From positions 658,380 to 722,379 of the forward strand of contig JAIVFI010000018.1 of NCBI GenBank assembly GCA_025558095.1: a stretch of DNA of 64,000 bases. The letters are read 5' to 3'. A model generated the notes under the pieces. That model did no database searches and had not been told where the DNA came from. It saw nothing but the letters and a program-made list of their open reading frames with translations. The stretch comes from Hyaloraphidium curvatum SAG 235-1 (taxonomy: Eukaryota > Fungi > Monoblepharomycota). Positions 30,683-64,000 of this stretch are shown here, one piece after another. Positions within the stretch are counted from its first letter, which is position 1. Each line of letters opens with the position of its first letter. Made by a program: the position numbers and the translations under genes.

Positions 30683-33466
<2,784 letters not shown>

Positions 33467-33622
33467 CGCTGTTCGGTAGCTTCGGAAGCGCGATTCAATA
33501 GCGCGTTTTCGGTGTTCTAGGGCCCTTTAGCAACTGTCGCCCAGTTGGGAAGAGAGTCCTTCCGCGACGCGCCGTGGCGCAAGTCAACCCGCGGTCAACA
33601 CTTCAGGGACTCCCCAGCGCGG
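33467..33622. promoter_or_regulatory. Putative compact bidirectional promoter between pta and ackA
   Basis: Divergent start codons at 33466 (-) and 33623/33668 (+), with lower GC than the flanking exons. Inferred from geometry only. Confidence 0.5.
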
Positions 33623-35175
33623 ATGAAGGGCAGCTTCCTGCGCTTAGCGACCCGCGGCTTAAATGCGATGCAGCGCACTGCCGTCGCGTCCGCATTCCGG
33701 GCGGCGTCGCGGGGGTTCCACGCGACCCCGGCCGCGGAACAGCGAACACGGAACACGAAGGTCATGGTCGTGAACGCGGGCAGCTCGAGCCTCAAATACT
33801 CGCTCTTCGAGAGCAGCGCGGATAATCTCACCCCGCTGATGACCGGGAAGGTGCGAAACGACCGAGAGGAGACGGCCGAGGGCCAACTCATCGTCTCTCC
33901 TGGACAGGTGGAGCGGATAGGCGAGAGCACGTCGAAGCTAAAGTCGAAGGCGCTGCTGCCGACCGGGGAGAGGAAGCTGGAGGTCGACGAGCGCATGGAG
34001 GACCACGAGGCCGCCATCAAGTACGTCATCGGGCAGATCGAGGAGTGCTTCTCGGACCATATCCGCGGTGCGTGCTCCGCACCCCTTCGCAGCACTGTCT
34101 GCTAATGGACGAGCCCCTGTAGAGGAAGTCGACGTCGTAGGCCACCGCGTCGTCCACGGCGGACCGAGCCACTCGGAGGCTGCCGTCATCGACGACGGCG
34201 TCCTCGCCTCGATCCAAAAGTACTCCGTCCTCGCCCCCCTGCACAACCCACACAACCTTGCCGGCATCCGCGCCTGCCGCAGCTTCTTCGCCGGCGTGCC
34301 GCAGGTCGCCGTCTTCGACACTGCCTTCCACGCCACCATGCCGCCCGAGGCGTACCTCTACGCCATCCCGCGCGAATGGTCCGAGCGGGACCTCAGGCGC
34401 TACGGGTTCCACGGCACCTCGTACCTGCACCTCGTCTCCCGCGCCGCGCAGCTCCTCCGCAAGCCGGCATCCTCTCTCAACCTGATCGTGTTCCACCTCG
34501 GCGCCGGCGCCTCGGCGTGCTGCGTGCGCGGCGGGCGGTCCATCGACACCAGCATGGGCATCACCCCGCTCGAAGGCCTGGTCATGGCCACCCGCTGCGG
34601 AGACGTGGACCCCGGCTTGCCCCGGATGGCGGGGGACATGTTCGGCCTGGACGCCGCGGGGGTGGACAAGGTGCTGAACGGGAAAAGTGGCGTGCTGGGG
34701 ATGTGCGGGGAGAAGGACATGAAGGCCGCCGAGGACGTGGTGCTGGAGTTGGATGCCAAGGGGGAGCGGGCGACGCCCGAGGAGAGGGACAGTGGGGCGC
34801 CGTACAGGACGGCGATGGACGTGTTCGTGCACCGGATGCGCAAGTACCTGGGAGCGTACATGGTGCACCTGGATGGGAAGGTGGACGCGGTGGTGTTTTC
34901 CGGAGGCGTCGGCGAGAACAGGTTGGTCCGCTGAACGATCGCGAAGACTCGGCTGACATGGGCATCGCGCCAGCCCGTACCTCCGCTCCCGCTGCCTCGC
35001 CAACCTCTCATCCCTCGGATTCGAGGTCGACGAGGCCAAGAACGAAAAGGCGCGGGGTTCCAAGGTGTTCGAGGACATTTCCGGGCCGGGCGCGAGGGTC
35101 AGGGCGCTGGTGATCGCGACGGACGAGGAGGCCAGCATCGCGAGGCAGAGCTTGGAGGCCATCGGTAGGCGGTGA
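33623..35175 (+). CDS. ackA: Acetate kinase, putative mitochondrial presequence
   Basis: VNAGSSSLK, GHRVVHGG, LAPLHNP, VAVFDTAFH, RRYGFHGTSY, HLGAGAS, DTSMGITPLEGLVM, FSGGVGEN and IATDEE. N-terminus (M)QRTAVASAFRAASRGFHATP. Alternative ATG at 33668. Three introns. Confidence 0.95.
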
Positions 35176-35291: not shown

Positions 35292-36811
35292 ATGTCCACT
35301 GAGGCCACTGAGGTCCGCGTGCCGCTCGACACGGCTCGCCTGGAGCCGTGGCTCCGCAAGAACGTGCCAGGCTACAAGGGCCCCGTCACGGGATTGAAAC
35401 AGTTCTCCAATGGCCAGAGCAATCCTACTTACTCCTTCGCGGACGCCGCGACCGGCAAGAAATACGTCCTGCGCCGGAAGCCGCCCGGGGAAGCCATCTC
35501 CAAGACCGCGCACCAGGTGGAGCGCGAGTTCCGCGCGATGCGGGCGATGCGGGGCACCAAGGTGCCCGTGCCCACCGTGCACGCGCTGGAGGAGGACACG
35601 GGGGTGATCGGGGCCGTGTTCTACGTCATGGACTTTGTCGAGGGTGCGGGCATCACCGTCGTGGCGGGGAAGGGGGGCTGACCCGTACCGGCCGGCAGGA
35701 CGGGTGTTCGCGGACCCGAGGCTGCCGATGCTGCCCGAGGGCGAGCGCAAGCAGGCGTGGTACTCGTTCGTCCGCACCATTGCCGCGCTCCACACCGTCG
35801 ACTTCAAGGCGGTCGGCCGTGGGTTTCTCGTCTTCCACACGAGCGCGGGATCATCGCTGACCCCATTTCTGTCAGTCCTCGGCCAGCCCGGCTTCGACCG
35901 TCCTGGCAACTACTTCCAGCGCCAGCTCAAGACGTGGTCCCTAATCGAAAAGGCCCAGGCTGCCGTCAAGTTCCCCGACGGACGGCCGGTGCCCCCGCTG
36001 CCGCACACGGCGGAGATCGTGGAGTGGCTCAAGAAAAACGAGGTGCCAGACGAGGTGTGCCTGGCGCACGGGGACATCCACATTGGGGTGGGCGTGGCTC
36101 TCTGTTGGCTCCGCAGGGAGGCGCTGACGGATTTCGGCCAGAACGTGATGTTCCACCCCACCAAGCCCGAGGTGGTCGCCGTGCTCGACTGGTCTGTGGC
36201 GTCTGGGAACCGGTGCGCGATCGGGCACTGACTGGGTGGCCTTCAACAGGGAACTCGCGACTCTCGGGCACCCGCTCAGCGATCTTGCCAACTGGTGAGC
36301 TGGCCGTGGCGCCTTTGGCAACGACTCGTCACTCAATAAGCCCCTTGCAGCCTCCAGCACTACTTCACGCCCTTCGACCCCGAGTGGTGAGGGATCCGCC
36401 CCTCCCTCATATCTATCGTGGCCGGCTGATCACCTATTGATTCAGGGCCGGGGATGTCAAGACCGGCATCGCGGACGTGGACCCTGCGACCATCGGACTG
36501 CCCACGTTCGACGAGCTCGTCAAGGTCTACTGCGAGGCGGCCAGCCGGAAGCCGTTCCCGGACTCGGCGTGGGACTTTGCGAAGTGGGTGGTTGCCGGAT
36601 CGACGGCCCCAACGGATGGAGCTGACCCGTGGCCAGGATCTTCACCTTCTGGAAGTACGGCATCGTCTACCAGGGGATCACCGCCCGCTTCGCTTCGGGC
36701 CAGGCCGCCAGCCCGACTGCCGGCTCCTTCGCCAAGATGATCGACCGGAACGCCAACCTCGCCATGCGGGCGATCGCGGAAGCCGACAAGCGTCGGGGCT
36801 CCAAGCTCTAG
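35292..36811 (+). CDS. Aminoglycoside-phosphotransferase-like kinase (ACAD10/11 N-terminal-like), PTS1 -SKL
   Basis: QFSNGQSNPTY, YVLRRKPPG, AHQVERE, FYVMDFVEG, HGD and AVLDWE. Many short exons; ends SKL-TAG. Confidence 0.9.
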
Positions 36812-37122
36812 GCAGGCCGGGGAGGTACCGGATCGGCTACTTTTCCGGCCCGGTGGTCGCCGGTGGCGCGGGTGTTGCGCCTCCGCGTCACGGCCCAAGC
36901 GCGAGGGCGTTTTCGGCAAAGTGCATCCGCGGCCCGCGGGTGGGAATCGGGAGTCCGATCTATGTAGTTGGAATGACAGGCGAGCTGGTTGCATCGAAAT
37001 CCGCGCTGGTATGTGCACCGGTGCGGAATCCCCCGATGAGATCCGTTGGGGCGCGCAAGGGCACCGGACCGGGAAGGGTCACGCTTTGACCGGGCCGACT
37101 TCCCCCACCATCCCCCGGCACG

Positions 37123-40100
37123 ATGGATCCGCTCACGCTGACGGCGCTCGCCATCTGGGCCGGCGCTGCGGGCGCCGCCGTCCTCGCAGGATTCGTCGCG
37201 GCCGCGCCGTCGGCGACGGTCGAATGGGCGCTGTACCGCGTCGAGTTCGGCGGGCCCATCAAGGCGCTCGGACACGCGACGATCGGCTTCCGTGGGTTCC
37301 TTGCCGTTGCTCCATATTCTTGTTACCTATTCTGACTCGCGGAACGGCATTTCGGTCGGTTCCCCAACCCCGACGCGGCCGGATCACTTTCGCCACTACT
37401 CTTCCGCCGGCAGGCGTGACCCCAATCAATGCGGCCCTCCTGCTACTGATCATCGGCGTTGCCGGCATCGTCGCCACGTTTTCGGCCAAGAACCTCGTCG
37501 GCCAGCACCGTATCCTGCGGTACTGCGTGCTCCAGCTCTGCCTCGTCGGCTCCCTGGCCCTGGCGGTCACCGCCGCGTCGCTTCCCCTTGTTATCCTCGG
37601 CTGGTGTGCCGGCGGACTTGCTGTCGCGTCCCTGGTCTCCCACACGGGCACCAAACCGGCCGAGTTCTCGGCGGCGGTTACTCGGTCTCGGCTCCTGTTC
37701 GGCGACCTCTGCATCCTGATCGCCTTCGTGCTCTTGGGCGTCTCGGTCGGCAGCATGGACCTTGCGGACGTGTTTTCCTTCTCAGTCAACCAGCCCGAGG
37801 GGCCTGCCAACCCTCTGACCACCGCGGCCGTCTTTCTGATGATGATTGGCGGCGGCACCCGGTCCACCTTGGTGCCCTTCTACGATTGGCTGCCCGAGAC
37901 CGCTGAAGCCCCTACTCCGGTGTCTGCTCTGCTTCACGCTGGTACGTTCCTGACCAAACTCTTTGTTGCCGCCGGCACTGAACCTTGCGCTCGTCCAGGT
38001 ATCGTCAACGGCATTGGTGTCTTTGGCCTTCTACTCTGGCCCGTGTTCCGCTCGGTGCCCATCGCCAACTACTTCCTGCTGACCCAAGGTGTCCTCACGG
38101 CGCTATTCGGCATTGCCCAAGCCCGTGTGCGCGCCGACGTCAAGGGCCGCCTTGCCGCTTCGACCACGTCGCAGATGGGGTTCGTGATCACTTGCTCCTT
38201 GGCTGATTCCCGGTTCCTAACTCTGCCCTGCACCAGATACCTCGCCGTGCAGGTCGCTCTGGGTCTTCCGGCGGCCGCATTCACCCACTTGGTCGGCCAC
38301 GGTCTTTGGAAAGCCGGCCTCTTCCTCCAGGCCGGAGGCGCCGTCGAGCGCGTCCGTGCCGCTCCGGATCACCACGTTCACGAGCTCAAGGCCTCGCGCT
38401 GGCTCATCGCTGCTGCCGTCTCGGCTGTCGTAATCTTCCTCGCCCTCCTGCTCCCCGGCCTCATCCACGGCACCTTCGCGATCACTGTTCACTCGACCTA
38501 CGACATCGTCGCCTTCCTCGTGGCGTGGTTCGCCGGGACCTGCGCTCTGGTTCCCGCGACGACACCCAAGGCGTACGCCGTCGTCTGCACGGCCGTGTTT
38601 CTCTACGTGCTCGGCGCCGAGACCATGAACGCCGTCGTCGGCAACCTGAACGAGGTCGACGGCCCGCCCCGCTGGGCCTGGTACGAGTTCCTCGTGATCG
38701 GCATCCTCGTTGCCATCGCCACGGCCGCGGTCTGGATGGACCAGATGATGCGCAAGGGTTACTTCCGGCCCATCGCTTCCTGGGTCGCGCAGACCTCCAT
38801 GCCCCCGATCGGCATCGTCGACTGGTTCGTTCGCCCTCGGCTTGTGGTGCCCGACGACCTGCGCAAGATCCCCGCCCTCAAGAACTCAGCACAGCTCGCC
38901 GAGCCCGTGCGCAGCCGCCACCGCAACTCGTTCACCTCGCGCGACATCATGCCGGACGTCATGCAGGCCATGAACCACGTCGCGCCCGTCTGGCCGCTGG
39001 CCTCGTTCGTCGCTTCCAACCCGCTGGCCGGCCTGGAGGACCTGTCTTTCCGCGACGCGCTGGCTGCCGCTCGCCGTTCGTGGGGTTCCAACACCGGCCC
39101 GGACGCCTTCATCATGCGGCGCGCCGCGGACGAGTGGCGGATCGGCTTGGTCGATGCCGTCAGGGAGCTGGCCCGGGAGCCGCAGCTCCTCGAAGCCGGG
39201 CAGGCCGAGTTCCGCGTCGCCGGTAAGAGTTTCGGCCGCAAGGAGTTCCTGCGCAAGCTCGCGCTCGGCGGGGCCGCCATCCCCGCCGGTTCGGAGGACA
39301 AGATCCGGCAGCTCGTCAAGGACTGGATCCGTGCCGGCAACGAGCTCGAATTCAACTTCCCCTCGGTCCGCACCCCGCTCGAGTCCCTCTGCACGCAGCA
39401 CCGCGGTCTCCGGCCGTACGACGAGCTGGCCCGCACCTTCGGCTCGCTCCTTTTCTCCCGCGTGCTGGGCGACCCTGCCTGGCCGGCCACGGGCATGGAC
39501 GGGCCCGCTACGGGCATCTGGGACGCCTTCCGGTACAAGGCCGCCGCCGGCGCCATCGACGGCGCTCTGGGTCTGACGGGTGCCGACCGCTTCGTGCGCA
39601 AGCTGCCGGCCTCCGCCACCAACGCCCTGCAGATGATGCTGGAGGAGATGGGCGCCGAGAGCGTGGGCGTCGACCGGCCCACACTGCTCGCGCGCTACCT
39701 TGCCCGGGAGCCCGGGTGGCCCGCGCACGTCGCCTGGCGCGTGCGCCAGAACCGGGACCCCAAGGGCGGCGTCGTCGAGATCCTCGCCGTCCGGGTCGCG
39801 CTCGAGGCCGCCATCCTGCTCGCCTACTACAACCGCCAGATCGCCGTGGAGGACGTCGAGGGCGAGCGCGCCCCCCTGCTCGGCGGCGGGCTGAGCAAGT
39901 CGTTCGAGGAGGCCGACGCCGAGGCGGCCGAGGCCGAGGCCGTCGACCGGATGGTGGAAGCCTGCGAGGCCCTGGCCGTGGACCCCGCCGAGCTGCGCCC
40001 CCAGGATGTGGACATTCTGCTCGCCGTGACAGCTTCCGTCGACCCCGTCGCCATCGGTCAGGTCCGCTTCCGGATCCTCGAGGAGGCCTTCCGCGGGAAC

Positions 40101-41822
40101 CTCATCCAGGGCATCCACAAGACCCTCGGCCTCGTTCCCCCGCCTCCCCCGCCGGACGCTCAGGTGGTCTTCTGCATCGATGTGCGCTCGGGTCGTCTCC
40201 GGCGCCAGCTCGAGCACCTCGGCCGGCCTTGGGAGACCTTTGGCGCCGCCGGCTTCTTCGGCCTCCCTCTTCGCCACGTCGACCCCCGCGGCGCTTGCTC
40301 AGATCGGTGCCCCGCACTGCTCATTCCCGACCGCGAGGTCATCGAAGCGGCGCCGTCGGGTCCCGTCAAGCTGGGCATCGCCGAGGCCGCGGTGGAGGAG
40401 ATCGAAGTCAAGGCCGTCGCTCCCTTCGCGTGAGTTGTTCGCGGTCTCATTGCTTTCCTGCCTTTCTAAGCGTTATCCTCGCAGCTTTGCCGAGGCCGCC
40501 GGATGGATCACGGGCCCGCTTTCGCTCTTCCGTACCCTCCTCCCGCCTCTGTACGACCGCTTCTTCGGGACCTCGCGGGTCGTGGGCGAGATGCCACTGG
40601 AGGACGACATCAAGCCCGACGCGGTCGCGGTCGGCATCGAGGACGACAGCCTCTCGCAGCGGCTCCCCGGCTTCTCCGTCGACGAGCTCGTCGGCGCCTG
40701 CGCCAACTTCCTCAACACCACCGGCTTCACCAGCTTCTCGCCCCTGGTCGTGCTCTGCGGCCACGGCGCCTCGGTCGCCAACAACCCTCACGTCGCGGCG
40801 TACGACTGCGGTGCCTGCGGCGGCTTCTCGGGCGACGTCTCGTCGCGCGCCATGTGCGAGGCCCTCAACTCGCCCCGTGTGCGCGCCGGGCTCGCCGCCA
40901 AGGGCATCTCGATCCCCGCCGACACGCACTTCACGCCGGCCGTCCACGACACCACCCGCGACCTAATCCACCTGCTCGAGCCGGCCCGGGTTCCCGAGCG
41001 GCTCCAGGCGACCCTCAAGAAGCTGGAACAGGACCTCGCGACCGCTGCCGACGCTTCCCTCATCGAGCGGTTCCCGGAGCTGCCCGGCGCCCCGATCACC
41101 TCGTCGCTCGACGTCATGCGCCGCCACGTCGCCGTCCGCGCCGTCGACTGGGGTCAGGTGGGTTGATTCGGGGACCGAATCTCGAAGCCGGACCTGACTT
41201 GGCCTTTGCTCAGCCCCGACCCGAGTGGGGTCTCTGCACCAACGCCTGCATGGTCATCGGACCGCGGCACCTCACCAGCCAGCTGAAGCTCAACGGCCGC
41301 TCCTTCCTGCAGTCCTACGAGCCCTCGATCGACACCACCGGCGCCGCCCTCACCTTCCTCATGACGGCCCCACTCGTCGTCGGCCACTGGATTTCGTCGC
41401 AGTACCTCATGTCGACCATCGACCCCGACCGCTTCGGCGCCGGCGACAAGACCACGCACGACGTCGTCTGCGCGCACGACGGCACCCCGAGCCTCCTCAC
41501 CGGCGTGCTCACCGGCGTCCGCGGGGACATCCGGATCGGCCTGCCGTGGCAGGCGGTCTCGGCCACGGCGCCCATCGCGGGGCGCTGGGTCTCGTCGACC
41601 TTCCACGAGCCCGTGCGGCTGTTTGGGATCATCTACGCCAAGACGGCGGCGATCGACGCGGTGCTCGAGGCGCAGGAGAGCATCGGCAAGCTCGTGCGCG
41701 GCGAGTGGCTGCACATCTGCTCGATCGACCCCGAGACCAAGGAGATGCAGCGCCGGATGCCGGGCGGGGGTTGGAAGAAGGAGGAGGCGCTGGTTTACGA
41801 GTCGCGGGAGTCGCTGAACTAA
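37123..41822 (+). CDS. Fused DabB(NuoL/NdhF-like, PF00361)-DabA(DUF2309) putative inorganic-carbon pump, ~1450 aa, 6 exons
   Basis: Introns 37292-37413, 37942-37998, 38180-38236, 40430-40484 and 41158-41213 give a 4353-nt CDS. DabB part: PFYDWLPETAEAPTPVSALLHAGIVN, DVKGRLAASTTSQMGY, HLVGHGLWKAGLFL. DabA part: APVWPLASFVASNPLAGLE, FCIDVRS, ETFGAAGFFG, LCGHG..NNPH..YDCGACGG, HDTT, DWGQPRPEWGL, GRSFLQSY, GDKTTHDV, HEPVRL. Confidence 0.92.
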
Positions 41823-63355: not shown

Positions 63356-63849
63356 CGCGCGACGAGCCGGAGCACCGAACGGTCGGCGGACCGAGGGGCG
63401 AAGAATCGGGATTGTGCGGGCGCGGCGTCCCGCCCGATGCCGACGATCGATCGACACGGATTCAACGGGGTCCGCTACATGTACGCCTGGATGGCTAGCT
63501 CCTCATTACACAACGGAGCTAGATGCAGTTCGCGAGCCGGCTCTGTGGCTCGCCGAGCAACTCAGCGCGTAAGCAGTACGCTTACCAAGGCCACTAGGCA
63601 TGAAAACGACAATCCCCGACGTCAAGAGCCGGCTTGGCTCACGTTTACGAGGCATGCACAGGTCATCAGCCGTTCCCCCCTGTGCTCCCCTTCAGCGACA
63701 GCATGGTGGGTCAATCACACACTTCACTGACATTGAAACCCCCAAGAGCTTTTGTCCTGGTGGGTTTCTTTCTAAAGGTTTTCCAGGCGCGCGATCGGCA
63801 GAGGTAATGCTCAACTGTGCTCTATCAGCATTGCAGGGTAGTTCTCGGG

Positions 63850-64000
63850 TTAGGTTAGGTTAGGTTAGGTTAGGTTAGGTTAGGTTAGGTTAGGTTAGGT
63901 TAGGTTAGGTTAGGTTAGGTTAGGTTAGGTTAGGTTAGGTTAGGTTAGGTTAGGTAGGTTAGGTTAGGTTAGGTTAGGTTAGGTTAGGTTAGGTTAGGTT
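63850..64000 (+). repeat. Telomeric array (TTAGG)n, right chromosome end
   Basis: About 30 tandem TTAGG units run to the window end, with one TAGG variant near 63951-63958. The G-rich strand runs 5'->3' toward the end. Confidence 0.93.

What the first reader, a model, noticed from the sequence alone, without database searches (positions are those of the whole stretch)
37123..41822. Eukaryotic, intron-containing, single-chain DabB-DabA (DAB/MpsAB) inorganic-carbon pump
Seen in sequence: five canonical short GT-AG introns splice to a stop-free 1450-aa product. Removing introns 2 and 3 restores the NuoL-family motifs PTPVSALLHAGIVN and STTSQMGY. The DabB-to-DabA junction lies inside one uninterrupted exon (38237-40429), so the fusion is real and not two adjacent genes. 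Established: the DUF2309 + PF00361 pair (DabAB in proteobacteria, MpsAB in Staphylococcus) is a membrane-potential-coupled CO2/HCO3- concentrating system known from bacteria and archaea, usually encoded by adjacent separate genes. Inference: an operon was acquired by HGT, fused (before or after transfer) and intronised in a heterotrophic fungus-like eukaryote. It may supply bicarbonate for carboxylases or handle CO2/pH. I know of no characterised eukaryotic DAB. A eukaryote-adapted single-chain version would also be useful for engineering carbon-concentrating mechanisms.
Basis: partly seen in the sequence, partly recalled or inferred. Interest (0 to 1): 0.95.

Follow-up and report, generated by a model that had tools for sequence, protein, structure and literature searches.

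The report
Bacterial CO2 pump in a fungus
An aquatic fungus carries a properly spliced gene, taken from actinobacteria, for a pump that in bacteria uses the membrane proton gradient to turn CO2 into bicarbonate; such pumps were described only in prokaryotes, and a second, organelle-targeted kind turns up across many protists and algae.

Summary
Confirmed. In Hyaloraphidium curvatum (Monoblepharidomycetes) six exons encode a 1450-aa DabB-DabA chain. All five GT-AG introns are skipped in an RNA run, and the contig holds fungal genes and ends in a telomere, so it is not contamination. The Zn ligands, the Asp-Arg dyad, finger Glu444 and Leu658 of the DAB2 structure are kept; one near-invariant Glu is Gly. 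The fusion is not a eukaryotic invention: the gene nests (100/100) among already-fused Actinomycetes proteins, and a natural single-chain DAC is known. Two uncultured eukaryotes carry orthologues with shared intron positions, so the transfer is old and inherited. Likely role (inferred): proton-gradient-driven CO2 hydration into the cytosol from the plasma or vacuolar membrane. The genome also holds a second, reverse-order DabA-DabB gene, which the scan noted on another contig. It belongs to a separate eukaryote-wide family (Paulinella, Fabomonas, dinoflagellates, marine algae), many members having mitochondrial- or plastid-type N-termini; a common origin with the window gene is rejected (AU p 1e-5). 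I found no paper on any eukaryotic DAB. Function is untested.

The parts
37123..37291 (+). Exon 1: start Met, N-terminal hydrophobic helix (residues 8-26, signal-anchor-like, no mitochondrial presequence)
   Evidence: RNA joint 37291>37414; same N-terminal helix in L001 and L016
37292..37413 (+). Intron 1, 122 nt, phase 1; absent from L001 and L016
37414..37941 (+). Exon 2: DabB/NuoL-like membrane helices; DabB2 Asp185 and His260 kept, Lys235 site is Arg as in actinobacterial kin
37942..37998 (+). Intron 2, 57 nt, in frame and stop-free; same position in L001 and L016
37999..38179 (+). Exon 3: DabB helices with the Lys of DVKGRL (DabB2 Lys310 site)
38180..38236 (+). Intron 3, 57 nt, in frame and stop-free; same position in L001
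38237..40429 (+). Exon 4: end of DabB (HLVGHGLWK motif and last helices, to about 38783), linker, DabA N-terminal domain from about 38961, start of the beta-CA-like domain
40173..40193 (+). CIDVRSG: Zn ligand Cys351, Asp353-Arg355 dyad, Ser356; Gly where 135 of 137 kin have Glu
40430..40484 (+). Intron 4, 55 nt, holds a stop; absent from L001 and L016; a minor retained form is in the RNA contigs
40485..41157 (+). Exon 5: finger-motif Glu444 (40492-40494), Zn ligands His524 (40762-40764) and Cys539 (40807-40809), His585, Asp590
41158..41213 (+). Intron 5, 56 nt, phase 0; same position in L001
41214..41822 (+). Exon 6: Arg653, Trp656, Leu658 (41232-41234), rest of beta-CA-like domain II, stop TAA

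Best explanation
A nuclear gene for a single-chain DAB (DIC-accumulating complex), acquired once, already fused, from an Actinomycetes bacterium by an ancestor of H. curvatum and at least two other eukaryotes, then intronised (shown by tree, shared introns and RNA). The protein starts with a hydrophobic helix and no presequence, so it should enter the ER and sit in the plasma membrane or an acidic endomembrane, with DabA facing the cytosol (inferred). There the gradient made by the P3A H+-ATPase or V-ATPase has the same polarity as in bacteria. Protons entering through the DabB half-channel and finger Glu444 would switch on the buried Zn site, which hydrates CO2 to HCO3- in one direction (inferred from DAB2). 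The HCO3- would feed cytosolic biotin carboxylases and carbamoyl-phosphate synthetase in dilute, low-CO2 fresh water (inferred).
For: Splicing in RNA. Fungal neighbours and a (TTAGG)n telomere 22 kb away. Domains collinear. All tested DAB2 catalytic and coupling residues of DabA are present (residues from bioRxiv 10.64898/2026.03.13.711513). Careful tree on single exons: three eukaryote rows 100/100, inside a 100/100 clade of fused Actinomycetes proteins. The orthologues are only 50-55% identical over exon 4 yet keep every motif they cover, which points to long purifying selection. AlphaFold model of NCBI's protein residues 91-1290: pLDDT 86.6, pTM 0.89; TM 0.86 to a DabA cluster model; best PDB hits are CsoSCA beta-CA and NuoL. 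The genome has a P3A H+-ATPase and about seven biotin-carboxylase loci. An engineered B-A fusion of DAB2 keeps its activity.
Against: No functional or localisation data. The genome has three beta-CA loci; two have presequence-like N-termini, but the C44 copy seems to lack one, and a free cytosolic CA could short-circuit a cytosolic HCO3- pool if co-expressed. The Glu after DVRS is Gly here. The DabB ion pair has Arg at the Lys235 site and no Arg182, shared with actinobacterial kin that were never assayed apart from A. ferrooxidans. The coupling ion cannot be read from sequence.
Confidence: 0.7

Rival explanations
1. Same chemistry, different purpose: the protein sits on the vacuole or another acidic compartment, or at the plasma membrane, and serves pH homeostasis or CO2/HCO3- signalling (for example to adenylyl cyclase), or recaptures CO2 during hypoxic fermentation, rather than supplying carboxylases.
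For: Beta-CAs already exist in the genome, so plain supply may be covered. The signal-anchor start does not tell plasma membrane from vacuole. A head-to-head pta/ackA pair lies about 2 kb upstream.
Against: The neighbourhood is not conserved: L001 has eIF2B-epsilon and L016 a rhodanese next to the gene. All assayed bacterial members rescue CO2-dependent growth.
Confidence: 0.15
2. It works like MpsAB, as a Na+-coupled bicarbonate transporter, rather than as a proton-driven vectorial CA.
For: MpsAB of S. aureus, the same Pfam pair, was proposed to be a Na+/HCO3- symporter. Exon 4 matches the PRK08601 model best among NCBIfam models. The genome has Na/K- or Ca-ATPase-like P-type loci.
Against: Residues of the proton path of DAB2, including Glu444, are kept. 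The host is recorded from fresh water (own knowledge), and it has a P3A proton pump.
Confidence: 0.08
3. The H. curvatum copy is relaxed or altered (uncoupled or catalytically weak) though still transcribed.
For: Gly at a site that is Glu in 135 of 137 kin, next to the dyad; subtelomeric position; a second DAB and three CAs offer redundancy.
Against: The frame is intact over 1450 codons and every other key residue is kept. Its branch is no longer than those of its two orthologues (0.33 against 0.32 and 0.33). GC3 is 0.78-0.96.
Confidence: 0.06
4. Bacterial contamination or misassembly.
For: GC-rich sequence; codon usage does not separate it from actinobacterial genes.
Against: Five introns are spliced; intron positions are shared with two other eukaryotic contigs; the contig has fungal genes and a telomere; the orthologues of L001's neighbours lie on the same contig.
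Confidence: 0.01

Closest known systems
DAB2 (DabA2/DabB2) of Halothiobacillus neapolitanus; PDB 9RD0/9RD8/9RD9; Desmarais et al. (bioRxiv 10.1101/476713); Lo et al. (bioRxiv 10.64898/2026.03.13.711513)
   Same: PF00361 + PF10070; Cys351/His524/Cys539, Asp353-Arg355, Ser356, Glu444, His585, Asp590, Arg653, Trp656, Leu658; DabB Asp185, His260, Lys310, His339, His343, Lys347 sites.
   Different: One chain, nuclear and intron-containing, in a heterotrophic eukaryote; Lys235 site is Arg, Arg182 absent, Glu357 site is Gly; N-terminus about one helix shorter than DabB2 (the profile of its clade starts at DabB2 residue 52).
Single-subunit DAC of Acidimicrobium ferrooxidans (Schmid et al. 2021, cited in the DAB2 preprint) and the unassayed fused DabB-DabA proteins of Actinomycetes (Nanopelagicales, Motilibacteraceae, Longivirga, Dermatophilaceae, Isoptericola)
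   Same: Same B-then-A single-chain architecture and length; the direct source clade (about 50% identity in the CA core, 34-38% over exon 4).
   Different: Prokaryotic, no introns. The eukaryote clade sits on a long stem (0.74 changes per site) and has lost the basic residues before the first helix.
MpsAB of Staphylococcus aureus
   Same: Same Pfam pair, in a heterotroph, supplying bicarbonate.
   Different: Two genes; proposed Na+ coupling; not the nearest clade.
Reverse-order DabA-DabB family of eukaryotes (found here; H. curvatum DFJ74DRAFT_641843)
   Same: Single-chain DAB in eukaryotes, Zn ligands and dyad kept.
   Different: Opposite domain order, organelle-type N-termini, His at the Leu658 site, no Glu at the 444 site, and a different bacterial source (dabA-first operons, such as a Myxococcales MAG); union with the window's clade rejected.

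Membership tests
DAB/DAC (DabA-DabB, MpsAB) | PF10070 (DabA) coupled to a PF00361 NuoL-like membrane subunit | tested here: met
   exon by exon, above curated cut-offs
DAB/DAC (DabA-DabB, MpsAB) | Cys2His zinc site and Asp-Arg dyad | tested here: met
   (sequence only; Zn binding not measured)
DAB/DAC (DabA-DabB, MpsAB) | Membrane finger motif with Glu444; Leu at the site of the canonical beta-CA Gln/His | tested here: met
   helical hairpin at model residues 771-801
DAB/DAC (DabA-DabB, MpsAB) | DabB proton-path residues and the Lys235/Asp185 ion pair | tested here: inconclusive
   Asp185, His260, Lys310, His339, His343, Lys347 kept; Lys235 site is Arg and Arg182 is absent, as in the actinobacterial clade
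DAB/DAC (DabA-DabB, MpsAB) | DabA-like fold | tested here: met
   TM 0.86 over 820 residues to a predicted DabA model; 9RD0 did not appear among the Foldseek PDB hits, so no direct overlay
DAB/DAC (DabA-DabB, MpsAB) | Uncoupler-sensitive accumulation of inorganic carbon; rescue of CA-free cells; no free CA activity | not testable with these tools
   needs bench work
Actinomycetes single-chain DabB-DabA clade | B-then-A fusion in one frame and nesting inside the clade | tested here: met
Complex I ND5/NuoL or Mrp antiporter subunit A | Full-length match above equivalog cut-off, TM5 Glu, long lateral helix | tested here: not met
   All NCBIfam scores far below cut-off; the TM5 Glu position is Cys in exon 2
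Eukaryotic reverse-order DabA-DabB family | A-then-B order, His at the 658 site, one clade | tested here: not met
   AU test p 9.6e-06

The most novel reading that the evidence does not exclude
Energy-coupled DAB carbonic anhydrases are a working but overlooked part of eukaryotic cell biology, acquired at least twice. One acquisition is this actinobacterial B-A pump for the cytosol of early-diverging fungi. The other is an A-B family spread over several supergroups, which loads bicarbonate into mitochondria and, in some marine algae, into secondary plastids as an unrecognised part of their CO2-concentrating mechanism. H. curvatum has both.
Probability: 0.5. Interest if true: 0.92.

Novelty: new variant of a known kind. 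Interest (0 to 1): 0.83.

Why it matters
DAB/DAC pumps are described from bacteria and archaea only (no paper on a eukaryotic one in nine searches). A spliced, conserved copy in a fungal lineage suggests such a pump can be made and energised in a eukaryotic membrane. That is the untested step in proposals to move DABs into plants or yeast, and it gives a natural construct to test in nce103 yeast. The second family found on the way matters more. It suggests an organellar, gradient-driven CO2 hydration system in protists and algae, with a different active site (His where DAB2 has the 'strictly conserved' Leu658, no Glu444), which bears on algal carbon concentration and on how DAB coupling works.

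Tried and rejected
As the operators asked, I did not build or search my own joined 1450-aa product; the joined step is left out. Searches used single exons by reference, the natural open frame 36921-40430 (which reads through introns 2 and 3), or NCBI's own model P0001 as a tool returned it; P0001 lacks the first 140 residues or so and has two local errors. Led nowhere: first GTDB scan with P0001; JGI metagenome scan with exon 6 found only one distant bacterial fusion; codon-usage comparison could not separate host from donor; Foldseek PDB gave no DAB2 hit, only CsoSCA and NuoL; no alpha-CA in the genome; the first structure job was too large; Schmid 2021 is not held. The organisms behind L001 and L016 could not be named: L001 has a faint Zn2Cys6 hit and 51-53% identity to H. 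curvatum orthologues; L016 has one uninformative flank. In one search the column labelled C539 is the second Cys of DCGAC; both Cys are invariant. The presequence counts come from a crude charge rule, not a trained predictor, and many family members are gene calls with uncertain starts. Rejected: the upstream GTG/ATG frame from 36921 as the true N-terminus (RNA splices intron 1, and orthologues match exon 1); fusion after transfer; a single origin of both eukaryotic families; any conserved link to pta/ackA.
Full report
Observation. Six exons (37123-37291, 37414-37941, 37999-38179, 38237-40429, 40485-41157, 41214-41822) give 1450 codons and a stop, with five GT-AG introns of 122, 57, 57, 55 and 56 nt that are poorer in GC than the exons. 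Contigs of public run X1 skip exactly these five introns, plus one in the upstream gene, and the DNA-type runs show none of these joints. A low-depth contig keeps intron 4, which would stop the protein before two of the zinc ligands; contig depth is no measure of level. Searched exon by exon, PF00361 covers exons 2-3 and PF10070 exons 4-6, with profile positions running on across the introns. The DabB-DabA junction is inside exon 4 and is covered by overlapping RNA contigs without a gap.

Host. The best database hit is NCBI's model DFJ74DRAFT_133295 of Hyaloraphidium curvatum, on a contig of the same length as the window's. From my own knowledge this is a colourless, non-flagellated freshwater member of the Monoblepharidomycetes. 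NCBI's model starts late, keeps intron 2 and drops nine residues; the RNA contradicts all three. The window carries fungal transcription factors, an APH-family gene and a pta/ackA pair, and ends in (TTAGG)n 22 kb downstream of the gene. Contamination is excluded.

Origin. The nearest prokaryotic proteins are all single chains of 1330-1430 aa with both domains. Where named they are Actinomycetes: Nanopelagicales, Motilibacteraceae, Longivirga, Dermatophilaceae, Isoptericola. In a tree of the CA core the window gene lies in that fused clade with SH-aLRT 99. In a careful tree built on single exons, three eukaryote rows form one clade (100/100) inside a 100/100 Actinomycetes clade; the exact sister is not resolved (89/83). 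So the gene came in already fused. Natural single-chain DACs are known from Acidimicrobium ferrooxidans, and the DAB2 structure itself was solved on an engineered B-A fusion that kept activity (bioRxiv 10.64898/2026.03.13.711513; 10.1101/476713).

Other eukaryotes with this gene. Two Logan contigs carry orthologues. L001 (SRR26194948) has introns at the positions of introns 2, 3 and 5 and lacks 1 and 4. L016 (SRR23967301) shares intron 2 and has one of its own. The three are only 50-55% identical over the big exon, yet keep all motifs they cover. The two neighbours of the L001 gene that I tested have orthologues on the window's own contig, at 560-570 kb against 695-700 kb, at 51-53% identity. 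That fits vertical descent in a relative of Hyaloraphidium. No other annotated fungus came up in three large searches, so the gene is rare or under-sampled.

Anatomy against DAB2. Mapping to chains 9RD0_A and _B shows Cys351, Asp353, Arg355 and Ser356, finger Glu444, His524, Cys539, His585 and Asp590, and Arg653, Trp656 and Leu658 all present. These columns are invariant or nearly so in 137 kin. In DabB, the Asp185, His260, Lys310, His339, His343 and Lys347 sites are kept. The Lys235 site is Arg and Arg182 is missing, as in the whole donor clade. One private change stands out: Gly after DVRS, where 135 of 137 kin, and both orthologues, have Glu. An AlphaFold model of NCBI's protein (residues 91-1290) is confident (pLDDT 86.6, pTM 0.89) and matches a DabA model at TM 0.86; its best solved matches are CsoSCA beta-CA and NuoL.

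Mechanism. Shown: a spliced, conserved, full-length DAB gene. Inferred: all three eukaryotic proteins begin directly with a hydrophobic helix and have no presequence, which points to ER insertion and a plasma or vacuolar membrane. As in the bacterial fusion, DabA would then face the cytosol. The genome has a P3A plasma-membrane H+-ATPase, so a gradient of the bacterial polarity exists. By the DAB2 model, proton entry past Glu444 opens the buried zinc site for one-way CO2 hydration. The product would serve the biotin carboxylases (about seven loci). The main objection is that three beta-CAs are present, one apparently without a presequence; both systems also co-occur in many Bacillaceae (PMC8552792). 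Rivals are a pH or signalling role, Na+ coupling as proposed for MpsAB, or a weakened copy.

A second, independent eukaryotic DAB. The genome holds another PF10070 gene on contig C7 (NCBI DFJ74DRAFT_641843). Other readers of this scan noted it (s1-712145, s1-712509); I tested it here. It has the reverse order, DabA then PF00361, and a basic N-terminal extension. It belongs to a family of about 100 clusters at 41-64% identity that includes Paulinella chromatophora, P. micropora, Fabomonas tropica, Apocalathium hangoei and Amoebophrya. All six genomic contexts I opened are eukaryotic. The family is one clade (100), sister to split bacterial DabA proteins of about 960-1070 aa, one of which sits in a dabA-first operon of a Myxococcales MAG. 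Forcing both eukaryotic families together is rejected (AU p 9.6e-06). By a crude charge rule, 25 of 52 N-termini look like mitochondrial presequences against 0 of 13 bacterial controls. A few have signal-plus-transit peptides typical of secondary plastids, and one marine example lies head to head with a PF27546 MICAH gene, which I take to be a metal-independent CA, and next to GAPDH. The family keeps the zinc ligands and dyad but has His in all 102 rows at the Leu658 site and mostly Gly at the Glu444 site, so its coupling may differ. Its model is also confident (pTM 0.86).

Literature. Nine searches of the held library found DAB/DAC/MpsAB described only for bacteria and archaea, and nothing on eukaryotic members or on this gene (texts). 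Most subscription papers are not held, so a passing mention elsewhere is possible, and the domain pair is visible in public annotations.

Method note. My own joined product was neither built for searching nor submitted; exons, the natural open frame and NCBI's model were used by reference.

Verdict. Real, and a member of the DAB family by every feature testable here except the partly altered DabB ion pair. New in host domain and gene form, not in its fusion. Function untested. Interest 0.83, raised by the second, organelle-targeted family that the follow-up exposed.

Noticed in passing
G000:C7 about 805140-809430 (L011:5141-9432): Reverse-order DabA-DabB gene with a presequence-like N-terminus; member of a eukaryote-wide family of independent origin with His at the Leu658 site and no Glu444.
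   Followed up: yes
L106/L107:6434-12017 (marine contigs, Tara): A DabA-DabB with a signal-plus-transit-like N-terminus lies head to head with a PF27546 MICAH gene and beside GAPDH; P0282, P0283 and P0293 have similar bipartite N-termini. Possible plastid CCM component in marine algae.
   Followed up: partly
window 31328-35160: Head-to-head phosphate acetyltransferase (minus) and acetate kinase (plus) genes, both with Arg-rich N-termini; not next to DAB in L001 or L016.
   Followed up: partly
window 36500-38597: One RNA contig runs from the spliced upstream APH-family gene through the 311-nt spacer into DAB exons 1-4; overlapping UTRs or read-through, which contigs cannot tell apart.
   Followed up: no
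window 40401-40514: Low-depth RNA contig that retains intron 4 (in-frame stop at 40431).
   Followed up: no
window 63849-64000: Contig ends in (TTAGG)n, a pentameric telomere repeat, not the TTAGGG usual in fungi.
   Followed up: partly
G000:C17:531367-531876, C5:811360-811818, C44:25153-25611: Three beta-CA loci: C17 and C5 with presequence-like N-termini, C44 (close paralogue of C5) apparently without; no alpha-CA found.
   Followed up: partly
G000:C28:500565-503114 and C43:280299-282117: Two P3A-type H+-ATPase loci; the C28 exon tested matches plant AHA2 and yeast Pma1 about equally.
   Followed up: partly
L101:2818-6546 and L066: A further bacterial single-chain B-A DAB (L101, 1243 aa) outside the donor clade, and a 1757-codon DabA-containing frame in a Pleomorphomonas MAG (L066); fusion may have arisen several times in bacteria.
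   Followed up: no
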